Source: Cyanophora paradoxa CCMP329 (lineage: Eukaryota > Plantae > Glaucophyta). From it: a stretch of 64,000 nucleotides of DNA. Both the position numbers and the translations under genes were made by a program. Position 1 is the first letter of the stretch, and each line of letters starts with the position of its first letter. Location of the stretch: positions 434,001 to 498,000 of the forward strand of contig QPMI01000542.1 in NCBI GenBank assembly GCA_004431415.1, written 5' to 3'. Below, one piece after another: positions 53,503 through 64,000 of the stretch. The notes below the pieces were generated by a model. The model saw only the letters and a program-made list of their open reading frames with translations, was not told where the DNA came from and ran no database searches.

Positions 53503-56500
53503 GCCCCCGCGACCGAGCTGCGGGTCTGGGGCCCGCCAGGACGAACGCATTAAGCTAAAGATTCTCATGATCGTGTAGCCCTAATTACAAATTCTAGATC
53601 CACGTGTGGTGGATCGTCTTTTTATCTTCTCTATTTTCTTAATTTCAAGTTTCAAGTCACAGAGTCACTGATTATGATCATGATCATGACGCGCGTACGC
53701 ACGGCGCCACGCGCGCAGCGCATGCGCATATGACGGCACCATCAGGCCCCTGAGGAGCGGCAAGATCAAATCGCACGTGCACGCATATGCATCGGGCATG
53801 CGCACCTGTACCCCAGCTCCTGCCTTTCCATCGATATATCGCCGCCCACGGCCGCGGGCCGGGGCCGCCGACCACGCGCGCGCAATGGGCTGCGGGGCTT
53901 CAGCCACAGCTGCGGACGCAACTCAGCAGACTCGGGGATCGCCCCCAACTAGTACTGCATGCGCATGCGCAGCAAGCTGCAGCCGACGCTACCTGAGGCG
54001 TCGAACAGCAATTGCAAGAATTAAAGCTATATAATTAAAAGCATCCCCGATAGCATATGCGCATGGGCCTCTCCCTTCTTTGAAGTCTCTTTTCGTTCGC
54101 GGGACCGCGACTGGGGACATCGCGCGCGGATGGGGGGAGCGGAATCCGAATCCTCGTGTGGGCCCGCGCGCGCCTGCGATCGCGAGGCTGGCAAGCTTCG
54201 CGAGCTCCACTGGGGCCAGATGGTGGAGGGCCACTGGAGCTCGAGGCTGCCGCGTCAGTGGCGCAGCTCCGAGGCTCGCGGGGCTCTGCGGCCCTGCGGG
54301 CTCCTGCGCGAGCTCGAGGCGCTGGCCCCGGCGCCCGGCGGCCGCATGCGCAGGCAGACGAGTTCGACGCTGTCACGTCAACGGAGCAGTGCGACTAGGG
54401 ATCGACCGGATAACGTATGTCGGAACTGTCGGAACTCGAGCCACCGACGTCGACATCGACAATGTACATGGATGTCGACGTCGACGTCGGTGCGATTCGA
54501 CAGAGGGGGGGGTAGGGCACCGTAGGGGTCATCCAGTCTACTCCAGCACTGTGGGGGCGTGTACAGGCAATCAGACTTGGGTACCTTAGTTGCTTGCAAC
54601 TAAGGACCCAGGTCTTCTATGTTCACGTGTATGGTGGTGGTTCATTCCCCCCCTAAGTTCCAGGGTGTTGGATTCGAACCCGAGACCCAACCCGTCAAAC
54701 ACGTTTCCTGAGCAATCCAGCAACCGCGCTCTCTTGCTTCCATCGACAAAAGTGAGCTCCAAAGCCGCGCGCGTCCGTAGAGCTTGCAAACGCGACCGCA
54801 GGTAGCCTGGTTGCCGAGATCGTGCAGCCTCTAAAGTTCCTATACAAACACGCAATTGTGTTTTCCAGGCAATCCAGCGACCGCGCCGGATTGCTTCCTT
54901 AGAGGAAAAGACGCTATGCAGCTAAGCGCATCGATATCCATTTTAGAAGCTAGCGCGATGGCAGGTAGCCTGGTTGCCAAGATCGCAAAGTTCCCATACA
55001 AACATGCAATCGTCTCCTGCTCCTCAGGGAGCGCGCGCGCGGTTCCGGTTTTCAAACCAGTTACAGGGTGCATCGAAACGGGCACGATGGCATGCTCAGC
55101 AGCATGGCGTTGAGGTGCGATCCATTCTTTGATCCCGGAGGTGGCCGTAGCCGTCACCAGGAAACATGTACCCCAATGTCGGCGCAGTGCGCACTCACGC
55201 AACCGTGCTCTCTGAAACCCAAGTCTGTACTGCCCCCCGGGGGCAGGAATAGTTATTGCAAGGTAGGGCATGATCGTATGATATTCTGGAACGGGCGGGA
55301 TTCGAAGGCGTGATTCTCATCGCAGGGCGATTCGAACACGGGAGGCATGAATCAGACAGCGTGTATGATAACCACACCGCAGCTCGCCACATTCCCCGGG
55401 ATTTCCCCCCCTTAAGAGACCATAGATTCATAGAAGCGTGGGTTCTATGTGAGGCTTTGTGAGCGACGGCGCCCGGGCGCCGACGGGCCGCCGACGGCAG
55501 CTAGCTGCAGGGAGGGGCGCTGTACATGTTCGAATGAACATGCATATGTACATGAACGTCAGCGAACAGCCTATAGGCTATAGCTAGGCCTTTTCCGAAG
55601 TACTAGTTCACTGAACTGAACATGAACTTCGGAGCGAACACGCGCGAACAAAGAATTTTCGGAAGTTCGCAAAGAAAGAATTTTCCGACCATAGTAATTA
55701 CTAAGTTAGTTCGGTCTCAAATTAGTGCGTTTTTTCGTTTTCAGTGTATGGGACGGGGGGTACTTCCTGTACCCCTACAGTAGTTTCTTCGAGCGCTTTA
55801 ATTAATGCGGTCCGGTCTCAAATTAGTGTGTTTTCCGCATATGAGAACACACCGTATACGTAGTGTGTCTCAAAATTAGTGTGTTTTCCGCGGATCTGTC
55901 AGTGCGCGTATGATTCCGCATATGAGAACACACTTCGGGCGGGCCGCCGCCGGCGGCGCGCGCCGGCGCCCGCGCGCGGGCCGCGCGCGCCGCGCGGCGG
56001 CGCCGGGCCGGAGACTGGCCCGGAGTCCGCGGCCGGGCTGTACACAGTACACATGTCCGCCGCTCATGATCAGGAATCGCGATTCGCGACTCGCGAGTCA
56101 TTCGCGAGCTCGCCGAGCTCGAGTCGCGACTCGAGCTCAGCGGCTCGCGAGCCCGGAGCCCGGCCTCGGATCCGGGGATTCCCGGACTCCGGGACTCCCG
56201 GACGGGACCCGGCCGGTCACCCGGAGTCCGCCGCGGCGGCCGCGCGCCGCGGCCGGGCGGCCCGGGCCCGGAGTCCCCGGACTCCCGGATCGGACTGGGA
56301 GTCTGGGACTGCACTGCGCCAGTTGACCCATGGCCAGCCCTAGGGCCTAGACTGCAGCGCGCATCCGATCGCGATGATCATCGCCGAGTCGGCCGCATGA
56401 CTGAGTGATCATCGGATCGGCGATTCCGGTCCGACGCGTACGGTCCTTCAGACACTGCAGATCTAGAGTCGCCCGCATCTTGCAGCGTGCACTGCCGCGG

Positions 56501-56576
56501 CAGTGCCGCCTGTTCTCAGCGAGCTCTCGGCAGTGAGTCGGCACACACTCCTGAAGCACGTCGGTCCGACGGTCAA

Positions 56577-59500
56577 ATGGGCTGCGGGGCGTCAGCACCT
56601 GAACCGACTACAGCTCGTTCTCTGAACCCTACAGCATCTGCGGCACCTGCGCCCCCGCAGCCGGCATCTGCGGCACGTTCGCCCCCGCAGGCGGCATCTG
56701 CGGCACCTGCGCCCCCGCAGGCAGAATCTGCGGCACCTGCGCCCCCAGGCCCGCAGGCGGCATCTGCGGCACCTGCGCCACCGCAGGCAGATCAAGAATC
56801 TGCGGCACCTGCGCCCCCGCAGGCAGAATCTGCGGCACCTGCAGCTGCGCCCCCGGGCCCGCAGGCGGCATCTGCGGCACCTGCGCCACCGCAGGCAGAT
56901 CTAGAATCTGCGGCACCTGCGCCCCCGCAGGCAGAATCTGCGGCACCTGCGCCCCCGCAGTCAGAATCTGCGGCATCTGCGCCCCCGCAGCAGCAGGCAT
57001 CAGCCACGGCGGCCGCGGCACCTGTAGCTGCAGCTGTACATGTCAGGCCAACAGCTTCAGCCACACATGCATATGCCGACGTCGCAGCTGCGCCGACGGC
57101 GTCGAACGCGACGTCCGCAGCGGAAGTTCCTCACCGGTACGACATCTTCATCTCGCACAAGCAGTCCTCTGGTGAAGATCTCGCCCGCATCTTCAAGACG
57201 ACGGTGCGAGCAGGGCCTGCGCGGGCTAGCCAAGCGCTCGCTGCACAGAACTGACGGGGCCGCCGGCGTGCGCAGGCGGAGAAGGTGACGGGGGAGCTCG
57301 GCATCGAGCTGCGCATCTTCCTCGACCGCGACGACCTCAACGACATCCAGGACCTCAGCGCCAACATCCGCGCCTCCCGCAGCGTCCTCCTCCTCCTCAC
57401 CAAGGGTCCGTTCCCCCCCCCCCCCCCCCCCCCCCCCCCTCGCGATCGATCCGCCGCTAAACGCTTGGGCTGCTCATCGTTAATCCTCCCTCTCATCGCG
57501 CCGCTTCATTCCGAGCCCGCCTCGTGCATGTGCTCAGTACGCTCGCGCCGTGCAGACGTGTTCCGCAGCAAGTTCGTGCTGCAGGAGCTGAAGGCGGCGG
57601 ACGAGGCCGCCGTGAAGATAGTCACCGTCTGGAACCGCGAGGGCGCTAACGGCGTACCCGAGTTCCCCTTCGGTCTGCCCCCTCCCCCCCCCCCCTCTCT
57701 CCGCCCCGTCTTCCCCTCCCCTCCCCGAACGCGTCCCACCTGCCCCTCTTCCCTCCCTCCGAGCCCCCCCCCACCCCCCCCCCCACCCCTCCCTCCTCAC
57801 CTTTATCATGATTTCTTTTACCAATTTTTCGACCCTTGATCATGATCAATGTTTACCTGCACTTTCCTCTACCGCCCCCCCCCCCGCCCCCCTTCCTTCG
57901 GGCGCTCTAGATCTCCTGTCCCCCTCCTTCCCACCATTCCCCCCATCCCCCCCCCGCCCCCCCCCCCCCCCCCCCCGTGCCCTTTCTCCTCCCACTCTTC
58001 CTCCTCCTGTAGATCTTGACCCTTGATTCTACGTATACGGCCTTTGACACCCATGACATTTATATGATTAGCCTTCCTTCGGCCCTGTTCTGACGCAGCG
58101 ATCACGAGCGCAGCGGCGACGGTCGAACTGCCGCCCTCCACGGAGCTCGGCGCGGTGGGCCTCGACGAGGAGGCGGCGCGGGCGCTGCTCGGCCGCGTCC
58201 TCAAGGTCAAGGCCGAGACGTACTACCGCGACGGAGAGCACCACCGCATCTGCATCGAGGAGGCCCTCGAGCGCTGCGGCGTCGAAGTGCGCAGCGCCGC
58301 CGCCGCCGGCTCCGGGCCCGTCCACACCGCCGTCCGCAAGGTCCGCTCCCAAGTCGTGCAGGGCGCGCGGCATTTCTCAGGATCCTCGCCCTTAATCCGC
58401 TCGCGATCGCGATCGCGCAGTACGCAAAGGCGGAGGTGGGGAACACGGAAGCGACGGAGGCGCTGGCGCTGTACGTGCACCCGAAGGCGACGACGGACGC
58501 CGCCCGCCGCAACGTCGTCGACCTCGCCGGCCACGTTGTCGCCTTCCTCCGCCGCCACATGCCCGTGCCAGAGGGGTCCGCGGCCAGCCGCACGGCCGCG
58601 CCAGCTGCCCCCGCCGCCGCCGGTGGCGCCCGCGTGCTGCTCATCGCGGGCGAGCCCGGCTCCAGCAAGTCGACCTTCCTCGCGCACCTGCATCGCCGCG
58701 CCTGCGAGCAGTGGGCCGGGGCGGACGGCCGCCCGCCCGCCGGCGACGACCGGCTGCCGGTCACGTGCCTCTTGCGCCTCTCGAACCTCACGCGGGAGCG
58801 GGCGGCGAGCGGGCTGCGGGCGGAGGTGGCCGACGCCCTCAGCTTGCCCGAGGCCGACCTCCCTGCCCTGCGCGAGAGGCGTGCCGCTGCCCGCCACCGC
58901 CGCCCCGCCCACCATTCCTCACTGCCCCCCCTCGTGCACAGCCGCGGGCTGGTGCTTCTGCTGGACGCGTACGACGAGCTGGAGACGGGGGCCGGCCGCC
59001 CGCCGGCCCTCTGGAGCCGCAACGAGCTCGGCAAGTGGGCCTCCGCCGTCGTCGTCACGTGCCGCTCGGCGTACCTCGCCGCCCAGCCCGACTACCCCGT
59101 GCGCCGCTCCTCGCGATCGGCCCTCCGCAGCCTCGCCCGCCCGCCCCGGTGCGCCCTGCGACCGCCCCGCAGTCGCTGTTCGCGCCGGCTGGCGATCGCG
59201 GCGCGCTTGAGGAGGTCTGCACCCACCCCTTCGATGCCGGACAGGTGCCCGCCCTTCCGACAGCGGCTGTTCAGGCCCCGTGCTGACCGCCGCGGGCCGT
59301 CCTTCAGGTGGAGGACTACATTCGCAAGTACACCGGCCTGTACGGGCCAAGTGCCCCCGAAGGGTTGCGGGACCGGGACTGCACGTGGACGGCGGAGGAG
59401 TACGCGGCGCGCATTGCCCAGGTCCCCGGCACCGCGACGCTCATCGAGAACCCCTTCACGCTCACGTGCGTCCGATCCGATTATTTGTGCCGACTCGCGT

Positions 59501-62500
59501 CTGATAATTGCAATTGCCGTCGCCTCGGGCGCGCAGAATGGTCGTGAAATCGCTGCCGAAGATACTGAAGAGCCGGTGAGCCCCGCTTTTCGCGCGTCAA
59601 CGCGCCAGTTGTCGATGTCTCACTTTTACATTCCGCAGCGAGGCGGCTCACGATCATTTGGAGAAACCGACAGCCAAGGCCGCCGCAACGTACCTCCTGA
59701 CGATTCGCGAGCTCTACCAGCAGTTCGTCGAGGCGCGCGGGGGCGCTGCGCATGCCGCCCCGTTGCAATTGGTTATGGGCCGCTAGGCGATTGGTGGCTG
59801 ACTGCGTTCGCGGGCAGCTGTGGTTCACGCGGCAGTGGGAGAAGTCGACGTTGACGGCAGCGGGGGCGGCCAAGGAGCTCGAGACGGGTACGGGCTGATG
59901 TGTCTTTTCCAAGACCCATGAACAGCTGTAGTCTGCACGATCGCACTTTCATGATCCCCAAATCACCTTTCACCAATCGCTATATATTTCAAGCAATGAT
60001 ATCTTTGATCTCGTGATCTGATGCTTATAGTTATACGTAACGCTGTCGCCAGGCGACCTGAAGGATTGGACGCTGAGCGACTTCCAGGAGAATACCCGCG
60101 GATACTGCAAATTGCTGGCCGACGCCATGTTTCGAGTGAGGCTTCCGCCCTCTAGATCTGCAGCGTTCGCCGCTGACGCCAGGGACTGTGCAGGCGGCCA
60201 TCTCCGAAGTGCTCTGCCCTCCGAAGAAGGCGAAGGTCGCTCAGTTCCTTCTTCGCGGCGCGAAGGCGGCGGATGTGACGGCGACGGCGGCCGCGCCGGC
60301 CGAGGGCGCGCAGAGCGCCGACCTCAGGCTCTGCATCGAGCTCCTCACGGACACGTCGGACCCCGTCCTCGCCTTCTGCCGCGACAACTGCCCCCTGCGC
60401 GTCGCCCGGGCGGCCGACGGCGGCACGGCCGTCCGCTTCCTCCACAAGGCCCGCCCGCTTTACGGCGCCGTCCCTCGCCCTGACGTCTGCGACAGACGCT
60501 CCTGGAGTACTTTGTTGCAGAGGGGGCGTACGCCGACGGCGCCAACGCGTTCCGATCAGTGCGTGCAGCTCGCCACTCCCGCCAATTCACGACCCAAAAG
60601 TGTGCTTTCTCCGCTTTATAAAATTACAGGCGATTGAGAGCGAGGCGGCCCCGCAAGAGGAGCTCGCCCGGCTGCGCGTGAAGCTGCGGGCCCTGCGCCG
60701 CGTGCAGAGCATCGCCGACGGCAGCGCCGCCGTCACGCGGGCGGACCCCAGCCTCCTCCACCTGCGGTGAAGCATTCACACGTTTCGCGTTCCTGCCTGG
60801 CATTCACACGTGTTGGCGTTGCTTGGACCAGGTTGCTGACAAAGGAGCCGAAGATCCTCCAGTTCCTCGCTGACTGCTGTACGGCTGACGTCGACTACCG
60901 TAACGTGCGCTGCAGCTGTGCCTGAACACATTAATTGCTTGCCTCGAAATCGGAGTCCGGCGCAGAAACTGCTGGATCTGATGGAAAGGAGCCGCCACGA
61001 TGACGCCACGCCGGGAGACATCATCGCCTCGGCCAACGCTATGACGATCCTGAACCGCGGTGCGGTCCACCTGCTCGCGATCGCGACGCTGTTGACACTG
61101 TGCGCACTGCGGCAGCTGGCTACAGCTTTGCGGGCAGCAGCCTCCGACGCGTGCGGGTGCCCGGGGCCGACCTGCAGCGGCTGGAGGCGGCGGGCGCGGA
61201 CCTGCGCGGGGCGGACCTCACGGGCTGCAACCTTCTCGACGCGAACCTCGCCGGGGCGGACCTCCGCGGGGCCGTGCTCACCGACTGCAGCGTCACCCTC
61301 AACCCGGCGCTCTGGGGGCATGAAGATCGTGTGCGGGCTGTCGCCATAACTCGGGTGCGCTGCTCAGTAGATGATGATGAGCGGGTGCCTGTGGCTGATT
61401 TTCGGCCACAGGACGGGAAGCGCGCCGTGTCGGGGGGCGACGACAAGACGCTGCGGGTGTGGGACCTGGAGAGCGGGGCGGAGCTGCGGTGCCTCGTGGG
61501 CCTCGAGTACATGGTCACCTCGGTGGCGATCTCGCCGGTGCACTGGGGGCGGGGCCAAAATTCCGGGCCAGAGGCCGATCGTGGGTGCCTCGGGGGCCTC
61601 TCGGCGGGCCGCAGGACGGGAAGCGCGCCGTGTTTGGGAGCTTGCACAGGAAGCTGCGGGTGTGGGACCTGGAGAGCGGGGCGGAGCCGCAGTGCCTCGA
61701 CCACTGGGGCCACGAGGGCGTGGTCCGCTCGGTGGCAATCTCGCCGGTGTGCTGGGGAGCGGGCCAGGGCTCGGGGCCCGAGGCTGATCGCGGGGGCCTC
61801 GGGGGCCTCTCGGCGGGCCGCAGGACGGGAAGCGCGCCGTGTCGGGGAGCGACGACAAGACGCTGCGGGTGTGGGACCTGGAGAGCGGGGCGGAGCTGCG
61901 GTGCCTCGCGGGCCACAAGAGTGAGGTCACCTCGGTGGCGATCTCGCCGGTGCGCGGGCGGCGGGCCGGGGTCGGGCCCTGAGGCTTACCATGGGGCCTC
62001 GGGGGTCTCTCGGCGGGCTGCAGGACGGGAAGCGTGCCGTGTCGGGGAGCAGCGACAAGACGCTGCGGGTGTGGGACCTGGAGAGCGGGGTGGAGCTGCG
62101 GCGCCTCGCGGGCCACGAGAACATGGTCACCTCGGTGGCGATCTCTCCGGTGCGTGGGGGGCGGGCCTGGGCTCGGGGTCTGAGGCTGATCGGAGGGGCC
62201 TCGGGGGCCTCTCGGGGGGCCGCAGGACGGGAAGCGCGCCGTGTCGGGGAGCTGGGACAAGACGCTGCGGGTGTGGGACCTGGAGAGCGGGGTGGAGCTG
62301 CGGCGCCTCGCGGGCCACGAGGGCGCGGGCATGATCACCTCCGTGGCGATCTCGCCGGTGCACAGGCCCTGAGGGGGCGGGGCCGGGGCTCGAAGCCCGA
62401 CGCTGATCGCGGGGGCCTTGGGGCCCCCTGGGCGGGCCGCAGGACGGGAAGCGCGCCGTTTCGGGGAGTGGAGACGACACGCTGCGGATGTGGGACCTGG

Positions 62501-64000
62501 AGAGCGGGGCGGAGCTGCGATGCTTCGCGGGCCACGAGGGCGAGGTCTCATCGGTGGCGATCTCGCCGGTGCACTGGGGGCGGGGCCGGGGCTCGGGGCC
62601 CGAGGCTGATTGCAGGTGCCTGGGGGCCTCTCGGCGGGCTGCAGGACGGGAAGCGTGCCGTGTCGGGGAGCAGCGACAAGACGCTGCGGATGTGGGACCT
62701 GGAGAGCGGGGCGGAGCTGCGGCGCCTCGAGGGCCACGAGGGCGCGGTCAACTCAGTGGCGATCTCGCGGGTGCTTAGAAGGCGGGCCGGAGCTCGGGTT
62801 CTAATCAAGAGTCTGATTGCAGGGGCCTCGCGATCGGGGGCCTCTTGGCGGGCCGCAGGACGGGAAGCGCGCCGTGTCGGGGGGCGACGACAAGACGCTG
62901 CGGGTGTGGGACCTGGAGAGCGGGGCGGAGCTGCGGCGCCTCGCGGGCCACGAGGGCGCGGTCAACTCAGTGGCAATCTCGCCGGTGTGTGGGGCGCAGG
63001 CTGGGGTTTGGGTCTGGGTCTGCGGCTGATAAATTGGGCCTCGGGGGCCTCTCGGGGGGCCGCAGGACGGGAAGCGCGCCGTGTCGGGGAGCTGGGACAA
63101 GACGCTGCGGGTGTGGGACCTGGAAAGCGGGGCGGAGCTGCGGCGCCTCGCTGGCCACGAAGGCGAGGTCACCTCAGTAGCGATCTCACCAGTGCGCAGG
63201 GGGCAGGGGCGGGGCTGGGGGCCCGAGGCTAATTGCAGGGGCCTCGGGGGCCTCTTGGCGGGCTGTAGGATGGGCAGCGCGCCGTGTCGGGGAGCAAAGA
63301 CAGGACGCTGCGGATGTGGGACCTGGAGAGCGGGGTGGAGCTGCGGCGCCTCGCGGGCAACGATTGGGCGGTCTCGTCGGTGGCGATCTCGCCGGTGCGC
63401 GGGGGCCGGGCTGGGGCTCGGGGTCTGAGGCTGATTGGGGGTGCCTTGTGGCCCCCTCGGTGGGTCGCAGGACGGGAAGCGTGCCGTGTCGGGGAGCGAA
63501 GGCCACTATATGCGGGTGTGGGACCTGGAGAGCGGGGCGGAGCTGCATGCGCAGCAACTTCATAACTCTGACTACACGGTCCTCTCGGTGGCAATCTCGC
63601 CGGTGCGTGGGGGTGGGCCGGGGCTGGGGGCCCGAGGCTGATCGCGGGTGGTTTGGGTGCCTCTCGGCGAGCTGCAGGACGGGAAGCGCGCCGTGTCGGG
63701 GAGCAACGACAAGACGCTGCGGGTGTGGGACCTGGAGAGCGGGGCGGAGCTGCGGCGCCTCGCGGGCAACGATTGGGCGGTCTCGTCGGTGGCGATCTCG
63801 CCGGTGCGCGGGGGCCGGGCTGGGGCTCGGGGTCTGAGGCTGATTGTGGTTGCCTTGGGCCCCCCTGGGTGGGTCGCAGGACGGGAAGCGCGTTGTTTCG
63901 GGGAGCGGCGACCTGTTTGGCAAAGACAACACGCTGCGGATGTGGGACCTGGAGAGTGGGTTGGAGCTGAGGTGCTTCGGGGGCAACGAGGGCGCGGTCA
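56577..64000 (+). CDS. NLR-like STAND protein: MGCGAS - Pro/Ala repeats - TIR - NACHT - pentapeptide repeats - WD40 array (runs off the window)
   Basis: TIR YDIFISHKQ..IFLDRDDL..SRSVLLLLTKDVFRSKFVLQEL; Walker A IAGEPGSSKST; Walker B LVLLLDAYDEL; VVVTCRS; NPFTL; FLHK-TLLEYFVA; SANAMTILNR..PGADL..GADLRGADL; then DGKRAVSGSxDKTLRVWDLESGAELRRLAGH repeats. Confidence 0.9.
56636..56995 (+). repeat. Coding ~30-bp tandem repeat (SAAPAPPQAE)n
   Basis: About 11 copies of TCTGCGGCACCTGCGCCCCCGCAG, in frame after MGCGAS. Confidence 0.88.
61412..64000 (+). repeat. Array of exon+intron units (~200 bp), one WD40 repeat per exon
   Basis: Exons begin AG|GAYGG at about 61412, 61615, 61824, 62024, 62226, 62443, 62645, 62859, 63066, 63269, 63471, 63678 and 63880. 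They mostly end TCGCCG|GT. The first is exactly 126 nt (61412-61537). Confidence 0.93.

What the first reader, a model, noticed from the sequence alone, without database searches (positions are those of the whole stretch)
61412..64000. One-exon-per-WD40 cassette array with hypervariable surface codons in an NLR-like gene
Seen: at least 13 consecutive exons (126 nt, a few 132 nt) each encode one WD40 repeat. All introns are phase 0, at the same position and homologous to each other. The framework is nearly invariant, but two patches vary strongly: SG(G/S)xxx = GDDK, SLHR, SDDK, SSDK, SWDK, SGDD, SKDR, SEGH, SNDK, SGDLFGKDN; and GH..V.S = LEYMVT, HEGVVR, HKSEVT, HENMVT, HEGAGMIT, HEGEVS, HEGAVN, NDWAVS, SDYTVL. 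Established: the equivalent positions face the top of the propeller and are the specificity-determining hypervariable sites in Podospora HET-E/D/R NACHT-WD40 proteins. One-repeat-per-exon immune-like genes are known in brown algae, but with LRR/TPR repeats. Inference: any exon can be skipped, duplicated or swapped without a frameshift, which gives a combinatorial receptor-diversification system.
Basis: partly seen in the sequence, partly recalled or inferred. Interest (0 to 1): 0.92.

Follow-up and report, generated by a model that had tools for sequence, protein, structure and literature searches.

The report
One-exon-per-blade WD40 sensor array
The tail of an immune-receptor-like gene of the alga Cyanophora paradoxa is a row of near-identical small exons, each encoding one WD40 blade, that vary almost only at the same surface positions that set recognition specificity in fungal HET-E receptors. 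There is no sign so far that the exons are mixed by splicing.

Summary
**Observation: confirmed.**
- Window 61412-64000 holds 12 complete exons and 1 cut exon of 126 or 132 nt. Each encodes one WD40 unit.
- They are separated by homologous 74-88-nt GT..AG phase-0 introns.
- RNA-derived contigs are spliced at the predicted borders.
- A public gene model (P0001) names the organism by way of its paralogues: Cyanophora paradoxa. It shows 17 units behind a NACHT-pentapeptide core.

**Hypervariable positions: supported.**
- Exon positions 10, 12, 34 and 36 are the four positively selected codons of Podospora HET-E/D/R.
- These four codons carry 40 nonsynonymous and 0 synonymous changes. Their pN of 0.51 is twice the intron divergence.
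- In 33 units from three paralogues, only positions 10, 12, 33, 34 and 36 exceed 2.5 bits of entropy.

**The "exon cassette" mechanism: not supported as stated.**
- The longest identical tracts between units (101, 89 and 62 nt) run across exon/intron borders. Exchange therefore looks like ordinary homologous recombination within a 202-nt unit, as in intronless fungal arrays.
- No exon-skipping transcript was seen, but the data could not have shown one.

**Verdict:** a new variant of known kinds (fungal high-internal-conservation NLR repeats; brown-algal one-repeat-per-exon receptors).

First-reader notes, all unchecked, flag at least six more such arrays on other pieces of this genome. I found no paper describing it.

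The parts
58631..59098 (+). NACHT-type P-loop NTPase exon (Walker A GEPGSSKS, Walker B LLLDAYDE) of the same gene
   Evidence: Pfam NACHT E 7e-5 on the ORF. On P0001:1-915 it gives E 5.1e-5, 23.6 bits (cut-off 26.7), covering profile positions 1-163 of 167.
61193..61288 (+). Pentapeptide repeats directly upstream of the WD40 array
   Evidence: Pfam PF00805 E 4.2e-12, 45.8 bits, above the 20.2-bit cut-off. Also found in the paralogues and in a prokaryotic NACHT-pentapeptide-WD40 protein.
61316..61354 (+). Opening half-blade (GHEDRVRAVAITR) at the end of the pentapeptide exon
   Evidence: Read from the sequence. Present in P0001 directly before unit 1.
61355..61411 (+). Intron 0 (57 nt, GT..AG, phase 0); not homologous to the array introns and without a G4 motif
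   Evidence: Removed in P0001.
61412..61537 (+). WD40 exon 1 (126 nt)
   Evidence: An RNA loose end after the donor reads the next exon's start.
61615..61746 (+). WD40 exon 2 (132 nt; degenerate unit that lacks the turn Asp)
61824..61949 (+). WD40 exon 3 (126 nt)
   Evidence: Pfam WD40 E 4.7e-9.
62024..62149 (+). WD40 exon 4 (126 nt)
62226..62357 (+). WD40 exon 5 (132 nt)
62443..62568 (+). WD40 exon 6 (126 nt)
   Evidence: RNA loose end at the donor.
62645..62770 (+). WD40 exon 7 (126 nt)
   Evidence: An RNA loose end before the acceptor reads the previous exon's end.
62859..62984 (+). WD40 exon 8 (126 nt; close to the consensus, used as search query)
63066..63191 (+). WD40 exon 9 (126 nt)
   Evidence: The joint 63191 to 63269 is seen in both RNA-type runs and in neither DNA run.
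63269..63394 (+). WD40 exon 10 (126 nt; TAG acceptor)
63471..63602 (+). WD40 exon 11 (132 nt; degenerate unit)
63678..63803 (+). WD40 exon 12 (126 nt; 95% identical to unit 10 including its intron)
63880..64000 (+). WD40 exon 13, cut by the window end (carries a 5-codon insert)
   Evidence: An RNA contig runs on past 64000 for 20 letters and then into the start of another exon. A DNA contig runs on into a GTGCGC intron instead. P0001 has four further units.
61538..63879 (+). Span that holds the 12 homologous array introns: 61538-61614, 61747-61823, 61950-62023, 62150-62225, 62358-62442, 62569-62644, 62771-62858, 62985-63065, 63192-63268, 63395-63470, 63603-63677, 63804-63879
   Evidence: The introns align over their whole length, with a mean pairwise difference of 0.244 against 0.151 for the exons. 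They share a conserved GGCTGAT (a likely branch site, by my reading) and a conserved last ~30 nt. Nine of the 12 carry a G-quadruplex motif on the sense strand.

Best explanation
**What it is.** This is the C-terminal sensor domain of a NACHT-type STAND (NLR-like) protein of the glaucophyte Cyanophora paradoxa. The domain is a tandem beta-propeller of about 17 WD40 blades.

**How the array arose.** It grew by tandem duplication of a 202-nt unit made of one 126-nt phase-0 exon plus one roughly 76-nt intron. That is why every blade has its own exon and why the introns are homologous.

**Splicing.** As far as the data show, the exons are joined in genomic order.

**How it evolves.** The units keep exchanging sequence by homologous recombination or gene conversion. 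The breakpoints fall anywhere in the unit, in introns as well as exons.
- This keeps the framework nearly uniform.
- It also re-pairs the two variable patches of a unit.

**Selection.** Diversity is favoured at four to five codons, exon positions 10, 12, (33,) 34 and 36. These flank the conserved turn Asp and the conserved strand Val. By homology they sit in the loops on the top, ligand-binding face of the propeller.

**Inferred function.** The array binds a variable non-self or modified-self ligand and releases the NACHT module for oligomerisation and N-terminal effector signalling.

**Where the diversity comes from.** It is germline, between paralogues and over evolutionary time. It is not produced cell by cell.
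For: **Shown**
- Anatomy of exons and introns.
- Transcript contigs spliced at the predicted borders, with introns present in the DNA runs.
- Public gene model P0001: 1732 aa, 17 units, NACHT-type P-loop and pentapeptide repeats upstream.
- Cyanophora paralogues P0003 and P0162 (14 units each) and P0017 share the pentapeptide-WD40 part. The NACHT hit is sub-threshold in P0162, and P0003's upstream part was read by eye only, not scanned.
- The same core occurs in a prokaryotic metagenome protein (Mrr-NACHT-pentapeptide-WD40 x14) and in Mortierella.
- AlphaFold model of P0001:890-1660: all-beta, mean pLDDT 77. Best Foldseek match is 2ymu, a highly repetitive propeller (E 1.5e-34). Apaf-1 also matches.
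- The HET-E/D/R selected codons are 7 and 9 plus 25 and 27, flanking conserved codons 8 and 26 (PMC1805685, PMC2873952). By my own alignment of the units they map to exon positions 34 and 36 plus 10 and 12.
- At these four codons, chosen in advance: pN 0.512 and pS 0.265. At the other 38 codons: pN 0.106 and pS 0.149. Intron divergence is 0.244.
- Neutral simulation on the exon tree: 0 of 2000 runs reach the observed pN at the intron-level rate. The fraction is 0.0075 even at 1.5 times that rate.
- Parsimony counts: 40 N and 0 S at the four codons, 61 N and 21 S elsewhere; Fisher P 1.7e-4.
- In 33 units from three paralogues, only positions 10, 12, 33, 34 and 36 exceed 2.5 bits; all others are at or below 1.32 bits. 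All 33 four-site combinations are different.
- The divergent paralogue P0017 has the same positions on top.
- Exact shared tracts of 101, 89, 81, 62 and 47 nt cross exon/intron borders. Unit pairs share patch 1 but not patch 2, or the reverse.
- A unit's nearest neighbour lies in the same protein more often than chance (17.4 against 10.4, P 0.008), and there is no positional orthology.

**Inferred**
- Ligand sensing and an immune-like role, from the architecture and the analogy with HET-E and Apaf-1.
Against: - The NACHT match is below Pfam's curated cut-off. No TIR domain was detected in this gene by Pfam or by a search of solved structures.
- No function has been tested in any glaucophyte.
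- The selection tests use 13 short, recombining units from one gene. Gene conversion lowers the apparent neutral divergence of framework and introns, which can inflate the contrast. The tree is only an approximation for mosaic sequences.
- In the parsimony count, multi-nucleotide codon changes were counted as nonsynonymous.
- The top-face location rests on homology with published models. I could not read the coordinates of my own model.
- The RNA data are short assembled contigs. They cannot show full-length exon order or rule out skipped isoforms.
- All DNA runs look like one strain, so variation in repeat number between strains is unknown.
Confidence: 0.72

Rival explanations
1. This is the first reader's reading: a cassette system that works through the exons. 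Individual exons are skipped, duplicated or swapped as whole cassettes, by alternative splicing or by recombination in the introns. One gene would then yield many receptor variants.
For: - All exons are symmetric and phase 0, with lengths that are multiples of three, so any subset stays in frame.
- The introns are homologous and G-rich, with G-quadruplex motifs in 9 of 12, which could favour recombination.
- Unit number differs between paralogues: 17, 14 and 14.
- Alternative splicing of one-repeat exons is named in the title of a 2024 brown-algal ROCO paper (PMC11378527; the paper was not read).
Against: - The only joints and loose ends seen in RNA contigs join neighbouring exons.
- Shared exact tracts begin and end inside exons and introns, not at the borders.
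- Fungal arrays, taken here to be intronless (not verified in the papers read), diversify in the same way (PMC2873952).
- Removing single blades would disturb propeller closure. This is an inference.
- The data could not have detected skipping, so this is absence of evidence only.
Confidence: 0.1
2. There is no diversifying selection. The variable codons are simply the least constrained loop residues of any WD40 blade. The uniform framework is the result of recent duplication. The protein is a scaffold with no recognition role.
For: - Top-face loop residues are the most variable in WD40 families in general (established knowledge).
- Overall dN/dS of the exons is 0.93.
- Only 13 units with DNA were available.
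Against: - At four codons chosen in advance from the Podospora literature, pN (0.51) is about twice the intron divergence (0.244) and about twice the pS at the same codons. Relaxed constraint alone cannot exceed the neutral rate.
- 40 N against 0 S changes at those codons.
- 33 of 33 four-site combinations are distinct.
- The pattern repeats in the divergent paralogue P0017.
Confidence: 0.13
3. The array is an assembly artefact or a decaying pseudogene. Repeat collapse or expansion in a long-read assembly produced an array that does not exist in this form.
For: - Tandem repeats of 202 nt are hard to assemble.
- Units 2 and 11 are degenerate.
- One unit of the gene model, beyond the window, has only 34 aa.
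Against: - Short-read contigs from independent DNA runs match pieces of the array without a difference, for example 63114-63333.
- RNA contigs carry the unit-specific variable patches and the splice joints.
- All 13 exons are open and have intact splice sites.
Confidence: 0.03

Closest known systems
Podospora anserina HET-E / HET-D / HET-R (HNWD/NWD family): NACHT-WD40 NLRs with highly internally conserved repeats
   Same: - NACHT NTPase followed by tandem 42-aa WD40 units that are nearly identical to each other.
- Variation concentrated at the same four codons, flanking the conserved Val and the conserved turn Asp.
- Intragenic exchange that makes new units by joining the 5' part of one unit to the 3' part of another (PMC1805685, PMC2873952).
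   Different: - The fungal repeats are taken here to be one uninterrupted coding stretch (my knowledge; not checked in the two papers read). Here every unit is split from the next by a homologous intron.
- No HET domain.
- A pentapeptide-repeat segment lies between NACHT and WD40.
- RIP, invoked in fungi, does not apply.
- No allele or strain comparison and no phenotype exist here.
Ectocarpus and other brown-algal LRR-ROCO and NB-ARC-TPR genes (Zambounis et al. 2012, PMC3341825; ROCO paper of 2024, PMC11378527)
   Same: - One repeat per exon.
- Successive phase-0 exons of identical length (the TPR exons are also 126 nt).
- Signs of positive selection on repeat exons.
- Candidate immune receptors of an alga.
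   Different: - The repeat type is WD40, a closed propeller, not an open LRR or TPR solenoid, so adding or removing units is structurally less free.
- The NTPase is NACHT-type, not ROC or NB-ARC.
- The lineage is a glaucophyte.
- Exchange tracts here are shown not to respect exon borders.
Highly repetitive propeller of PDB entry 2ymu, and prokaryotic NACHT-pentapeptide-WD40 proteins such as P0023
   Same: - Best structural match of the model is 2ymu (E 1.5e-34).
- P0023 has the same NACHT-pentapeptide-WD40 x14 core and units 58% identical to exon 8.
   Different: - Prokaryotic genes have no introns.
- The N-terminal domains differ (a ParA-like domain and an Mrr nuclease in P0023).
Apaf-1 (animal STAND ATPase with two WD40 propellers)
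   Same: A STAND NTPase followed by a tandem WD40 propeller sensor. It is among the top structural matches (3shf, 3sfz).
   Different: - NB-ARC, not NACHT.
- The blades are divergent, there is no internal conservation and no hypervariable pattern.
- The ligand is known (cytochrome c).

Membership tests
WD40 repeat beta-propeller (Pfam PF00400) | A unit of about 40 aa that matches the WD40 profile above the curated cut-off | tested here: met
   A single exon (window 61824-61949) gives E 4.7e-9, 36.8 bits, against a cut-off of 27.
WD40 repeat beta-propeller (Pfam PF00400) | Four-stranded blades that assemble into closed propellers | tested here: met
   The AlphaFold model of P0001:890-1660 is all-beta with mean pLDDT 77. 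Foldseek matches 2ymu (E 1.5e-34), double propellers of the SSU processome, and Apaf-1. The number of blades per propeller was not read from the model.
NLR / STAND NTPase, NACHT clade | Central NACHT P-loop NTPase domain | tested here: inconclusive
   Pfam NACHT gives E 5.1e-5, 23.6 bits, below the 26.7-bit cut-off, but it covers positions 1-163 of 167. Walker A and Walker B motifs are visible. The prokaryotic relative P0023 passes the cut-off at 34.6 bits.
NLR / STAND NTPase, NACHT clade | Three-part architecture: N-terminal effector, NTPase, C-terminal repeat sensor, in one transcript | tested here: met
   Gene model P0001. RNA-supported introns link 60135 through 61115 up to the array. The N-terminal part of the model is doubtful.
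NLR / STAND NTPase, NACHT clade | Recognised N-terminal effector domain (TIR claimed by the scan for this gene) | tested here: not met
   No TIR hit for the window ORFs or for P0001:1-915 in Pfam, and none in the search of solved structures. Paralogue P0017 gives TIR_2 at E 8.2e-5, below the cut-off. A YDIFISH motif at about 57200 was read by eye only.
NLR / STAND NTPase, NACHT clade | Role in non-self recognition or cell death | not testable with these tools
   No experimental data were found for Cyanophora.
Fungal high-internal-conservation NLR repeats (HET-E/D/R type) | Tandem repeat units with very high identity to each other | tested here: met
   Mean pairwise exon difference is 0.151, down to 0.048. 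The framework is invariant at 18 of 42 codons.
Fungal high-internal-conservation NLR repeats (HET-E/D/R type) | Excess nonsynonymous change at the four top-face codons that flank the conserved Val and Asp | tested here: met
   pN 0.512 against intron divergence 0.244. Simulation gives 0 of 2000. Counts are 40 N and 0 S against 61 N and 21 S. The entropy pattern holds in 33 units. The limits are stated in the Against line.
Fungal high-internal-conservation NLR repeats (HET-E/D/R type) | Variation in repeat number and order between alleles or strains | not testable with these tools
   The DNA runs laid look like one strain. Between paralogues the numbers are 17, 14 and 14, and order is not conserved.
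Fungal high-internal-conservation NLR repeats (HET-E/D/R type) | Uninterrupted repeat-coding DNA with a HET death domain | tested here: not met
   There is an intron after every unit. No HET domain was found.
Brown-algal one-repeat-per-exon receptors | One repeat per exon, with successive phase-0 exons of equal length | tested here: met
   The criterion is taken from PMC3341825.
Brown-algal one-repeat-per-exon receptors | LRR or TPR repeats on a ROCO or NB-ARC core | tested here: not met
   The repeats are WD40 and the core is NACHT-type.
Brown-algal one-repeat-per-exon receptors | Exchange of whole exons (exon shuffling) or alternative splicing of repeat exons | tested here: inconclusive
   Exchange is seen, but the tracts cross the borders. 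No skipped junction was seen in RNA contigs, which could not have resolved one.

The most novel reading that the evidence does not exclude
The G-rich array introns are not passive. Nine of 12 carry a four-run G-quadruplex motif on the sense strand, against none of six upstream introns of the same gene. When transcribed, they might form G4 or G-loop structures that start recombination between units. Known parallels are the G4 needed for Neisseria pilin variation and the G-rich immunoglobulin switch regions (my knowledge, not tested here). That would give Cyanophora a built-in, possibly inducible way to reshuffle receptor blades. Exon skipping could add to it.
Probability: 0.1. Interest if true: 0.9.

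Novelty: new variant of a known kind. Interest (0 to 1): 0.64.

Why it matters
Nearly identical tandem sensor repeats with a few hypervariable surface codons were known from fungal NLRs. One-repeat-per-exon receptor genes were known from brown algae, with LRR and TPR repeats. This gene combines both features, with WD40 blades, in a glaucophyte, a deep branch of the plastid-bearing eukaryotes where no immune receptors have been studied.

The hypervariable codons are the same four as in Podospora. That points to a convergent or very old solution for evolving new binding surfaces on a propeller.

It also offers a clean natural test of whether introns help repeat diversification. The tracts seen here suggest they are not needed.

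The family appears to have many members in this genome. A genome-wide codon analysis and long-read cDNA would be enough to settle the open points.

Tried and rejected
- **DNA of the paralogues.** The look-up of encoding contigs for P0003 found nothing on record. Paralogue comparisons were therefore made at protein level only, and the part of the array beyond 64000 was seen only in the gene model. That part includes an odd 34-aa unit.
- **TIR domain.** Pfam on the window ORFs and on P0001:1-915, and a search of solved structures with P0001:1-135, gave no TIR hit.
- **Unit-number variants in DNA runs.** Several "skips" were reported (for example 62597 to 63799, and 61272 to 63080). They have only 20-23 letters on the shorter side, below the tool's own reliability line of 30. 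I take them for paralogue or repeat-graph joins, not alleles.
- **Exon skipping.** No such joint was listed. Contigs break at the repeats, so this is not evidence of absence.
- **Mapping variable residues on my own model.** The model's coordinates are not readable here, so the top-face claim rests on homology.
- **Post-hoc dN/dS.** The seven most variable columns gave dN/dS 1.81. I do not rely on it because the columns were chosen by their variability. I replaced it with the four codons fixed in advance from the literature.
- **Literature.**
  - Cyanophora with NACHT: 5 papers, none relevant.
  - Glaucophyte with NLR and WD40.
  - NACHT with WD40, microalga and intron.
  - The 2019 genome paper has no mention of WD40 or TIR.
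  - One broad search was too loose to be useful.
  - One search and one paper look-up failed on the format of the terms.
- **Joined spliced product.** Searches used single exons by reference, and afterwards the public gene model that the search returned.

Full report
**What is there**

Window 61404-63906 is one tandem array with period 202, 12.2 copies and 80% matches. The motif made of an acceptor plus the exon start occurs 13 times in the window, and only here.

- Cutting at the conserved donor gives 12 complete exons. Nine are 126 nt and three are 132 nt.
- A thirteenth exon is cut off at 64000.
- All exons translate without a stop into one WD40 unit of the form DGKRAVSGSxDKTLRVWDLESGAELRRLAGHxxxVxSVAISP.
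- The 12 introns are 74-88 nt, GT..AG and phase 0. They align with each other end to end.
- Only two intron lengths are multiples of three, so read-through is excluded.
- One exon alone passes Pfam's WD40 cut-off.

**Is it expressed and spliced**

I laid window 58001-64000 on four public runs. The two runs guessed to be RNA show GT..AG joints that both DNA runs lack.

- There are five canonical introns upstream in the same gene.
- One intron, 60449-60495, fits as GC..AG once the cut is shifted by the two ambiguous letters.
- Inside the array, the joint 63191 to 63269 matches intron 9.
- Loose ends that read the first letters of the next exon follow the predicted donors of exons 1, 6, 10 and 12.
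- Loose ends that read the end of the previous exon precede several acceptors.
- After 64000 an RNA contig continues for 20 letters and then enters another exon start. A DNA contig continues into a GTGCGC intron instead. The array therefore goes on past the window.

These are short assembled contigs that break at the repeats. They prove splicing at the borders. They do not prove full-length exon order, and they do not exclude skipped forms.

**Whose gene**

I searched exon 8 by reference against the representative protein library.

- The top hit is P0001 (1732 aa), the public gene model of this very locus. It contains all 13 window exons, joined at my borders and in genomic order. Four more units and a tail of about 100 aa follow.
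- The second hit, P0003, is labelled Cyanophora paradoxa.
- The genome paper gives 67.6% GC, 9.2 introns per gene and a mean intron of 86 bp, which fits the window.

Upstream of the array, P0001 has pentapeptide repeats (E 5.8e-10). It also has a NACHT-type P-loop domain that covers nearly the whole Pfam profile but scores just under the cut-off. No TIR domain was detected.

- Paralogues P0003 and P0162 have 14 units each, and P0017 is a more distant one.
- The NACHT-pentapeptide-WD40 core also exists in a prokaryotic metagenome protein and in the fungus Mortierella.
- The Mortierella WD40 region lies in a single exon. A Chondrus TIR-NB-ARC-WD40 gene has no intron at all.
- The intron after every blade is therefore what is special in Cyanophora.

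**Fold**

An AlphaFold model of P0001:890-1660, built with a 30-sequence alignment, is all-beta with mean pLDDT 77. Its best match among solved structures is 2ymu, a highly repetitive propeller. Double propellers of the ribosome-assembly machinery and Apaf-1 follow.

**Hypervariable positions**

The Podospora papers report four codons under strong positive selection: 7 and 9, flanking conserved codon 8, and 25 and 27, flanking conserved codon 26. Both pairs were modelled on the top interaction surface (PMC1805685 and PMC2873952). The residues listed in their table fix the register. Codon 8 is the strand Val after GH, and codon 26 is the turn Asp. In the Cyanophora exon these four codons are positions 34, 36, 10 and 12.

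I used these four codons, fixed in advance, on the 13 window exons.

| Measure | Four codons | Other 38 codons |
|---|---|---|
| pN | 0.512 | 0.106 |
| pS | 0.265 | 0.149 |
| Parsimony changes | 40 N, 0 S | 61 N, 21 S |

- Mean intron difference is 0.244.
- Simulating neutral codon change on the exon tree at the intron-level rate never reached the observed pN in 2000 runs. The fraction was 0.0075 at about 1.5 times that rate.
- Fisher's test on the parsimony counts gives P 1.7e-4.
- In 33 canonical units from three paralogues, entropy exceeds 2.5 bits only at positions 10, 12, 33, 34 and 36. It is 1.32 bits or less everywhere else. All 33 four-site combinations differ.
- P0017 shows the same ranking of positions.

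Caveats: few and short sequences, a mosaic history, conversion that lowers the neutral yardstick, and a simple counting method.

**How the units exchange**

Pairwise identity is mosaic. The longest exact matches between units are listed below.

| Length | Copy A | Copy B |
|---|---|---|
| 101 nt | exon 10 nt 69 into intron 10 | exon 12 nt 69 into intron 12 |
| 89 nt | last 30 nt of intron 4 to exon 5 nt 59 | last 30 nt of intron 8 to exon 9 nt 59 |
| 81 nt | last 3 nt of intron 0 to exon 1 nt 78 | last 3 nt of intron 7 to exon 8 nt 78 |
| 62 nt | last 17 nt of intron 3 to exon 4 nt 45 | last 17 nt of intron 6 to exon 7 nt 45 |
| 47 nt | last 28 nt of intron 1 to exon 2 nt 19 | last 28 nt of intron 2 to exon 3 nt 19 |

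- The tracts ignore exon borders.
- Breakpoints between the two variable patches re-pair them. Exons 5 and 9 share patch 1 but not patch 2, and exons 10 and 12 do the reverse.
- This is the mode described for Podospora mutants, where the 5' part of one unit fuses with the 3' part of another.
- Between paralogues, a unit's nearest neighbour is in its own protein more often than chance (17.4 against 10.4, P 0.008). Ordinal positions do not correspond.

**Reading**

The array is best explained as a germline-evolving WD40 sensor of an NLR-like protein. It was amplified as exon-plus-intron units, is kept uniform by recombination, and is diversified at its binding-face codons.

The symmetric exons make skipping possible in principle. 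Nothing seen here shows that it happens, and the introns are not needed for the DNA-level exchange.

**Known or new**

The closest systems are the fungal HET-E/D/R type repeats and the brown-algal one-repeat-per-exon receptors (PMC3341825). I found no paper that describes this family or its exon structure in Cyanophora or any glaucophyte.

The scan's own first-reader notes list at least six further such arrays, plus NACHT-pentapeptide-WD40 gene pairs, on other pieces of this genome. I did not check those notes.

I did not build or search a joined spliced product from the window. Single exons were used by reference, and afterwards the public model returned by the search.

Noticed in passing
window 61538-63879 (array introns): Nine of the 12 array introns carry a G-quadruplex motif (four runs of G3 or more with loops of 1-7) on the sense strand, and six fold with a G4 in the minimum-energy RNA structure. 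None of the six upstream introns of the same gene has the motif. Density is 3.48 per kb in the array against 0.44 per kb (+ strand) in the rest of the window. GC skew of 62001-64000 is +0.284, the highest in the window. The introns are copies of one another, so these are not nine independent events.
   Followed up: partly
window 60447-60495: Both RNA-type runs show a 47-nt intron here that fits GC..AG once the two ambiguous letters are shifted. The spliced form keeps the residues AVRFLHK, as paralogue P0003 does. The public gene model P0001 leaves them out, so the model is imprecise here.
   Followed up: partly
P0001 residues 1472-1505 and P0162 residues 1474-1507 (beyond the window): In two paralogues the gene model has one short unit of 34 aa that lacks the last strand. 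In both it comes directly after a unit lengthened to 46-47 aa. This is either a recurrent gene-model error or a real paired irregularity, perhaps at a propeller boundary.
   Followed up: no
window 56487-57254 and P0001 N-terminus: The first residues of the public model come from a different frame than the ORF that carries MGCGAS (a possible acylation start) and YDIFISH (TIR-like by eye). The model's N-terminus is probably wrong. Pfam finds no TIR in the pieces.
   Followed up: partly
window 56632-56999: A 30/66/108-nt tandem repeat encodes a low-complexity Ala/Pro/Gln-rich stretch (SAAPAPPQA-like) near the start of the same gene.
   Followed up: no
P0023 (prokaryotic metagenome protein): It has the architecture ParA-like, Mrr nuclease, NACHT, pentapeptide, WD40 x14, with units 58% identical to exon 8. 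The NACHT-pentapeptide-WD40 core is thus shared with prokaryotes and with Mortierella, which raises the question of a bacterial origin for the Cyanophora family.
   Followed up: partly
window 61364-62737, minus strand: A 457-aa open frame runs antisense through the array. It is most simply a by-product of the GC-rich periodic sequence, and no evidence of coding was sought.
   Followed up: no
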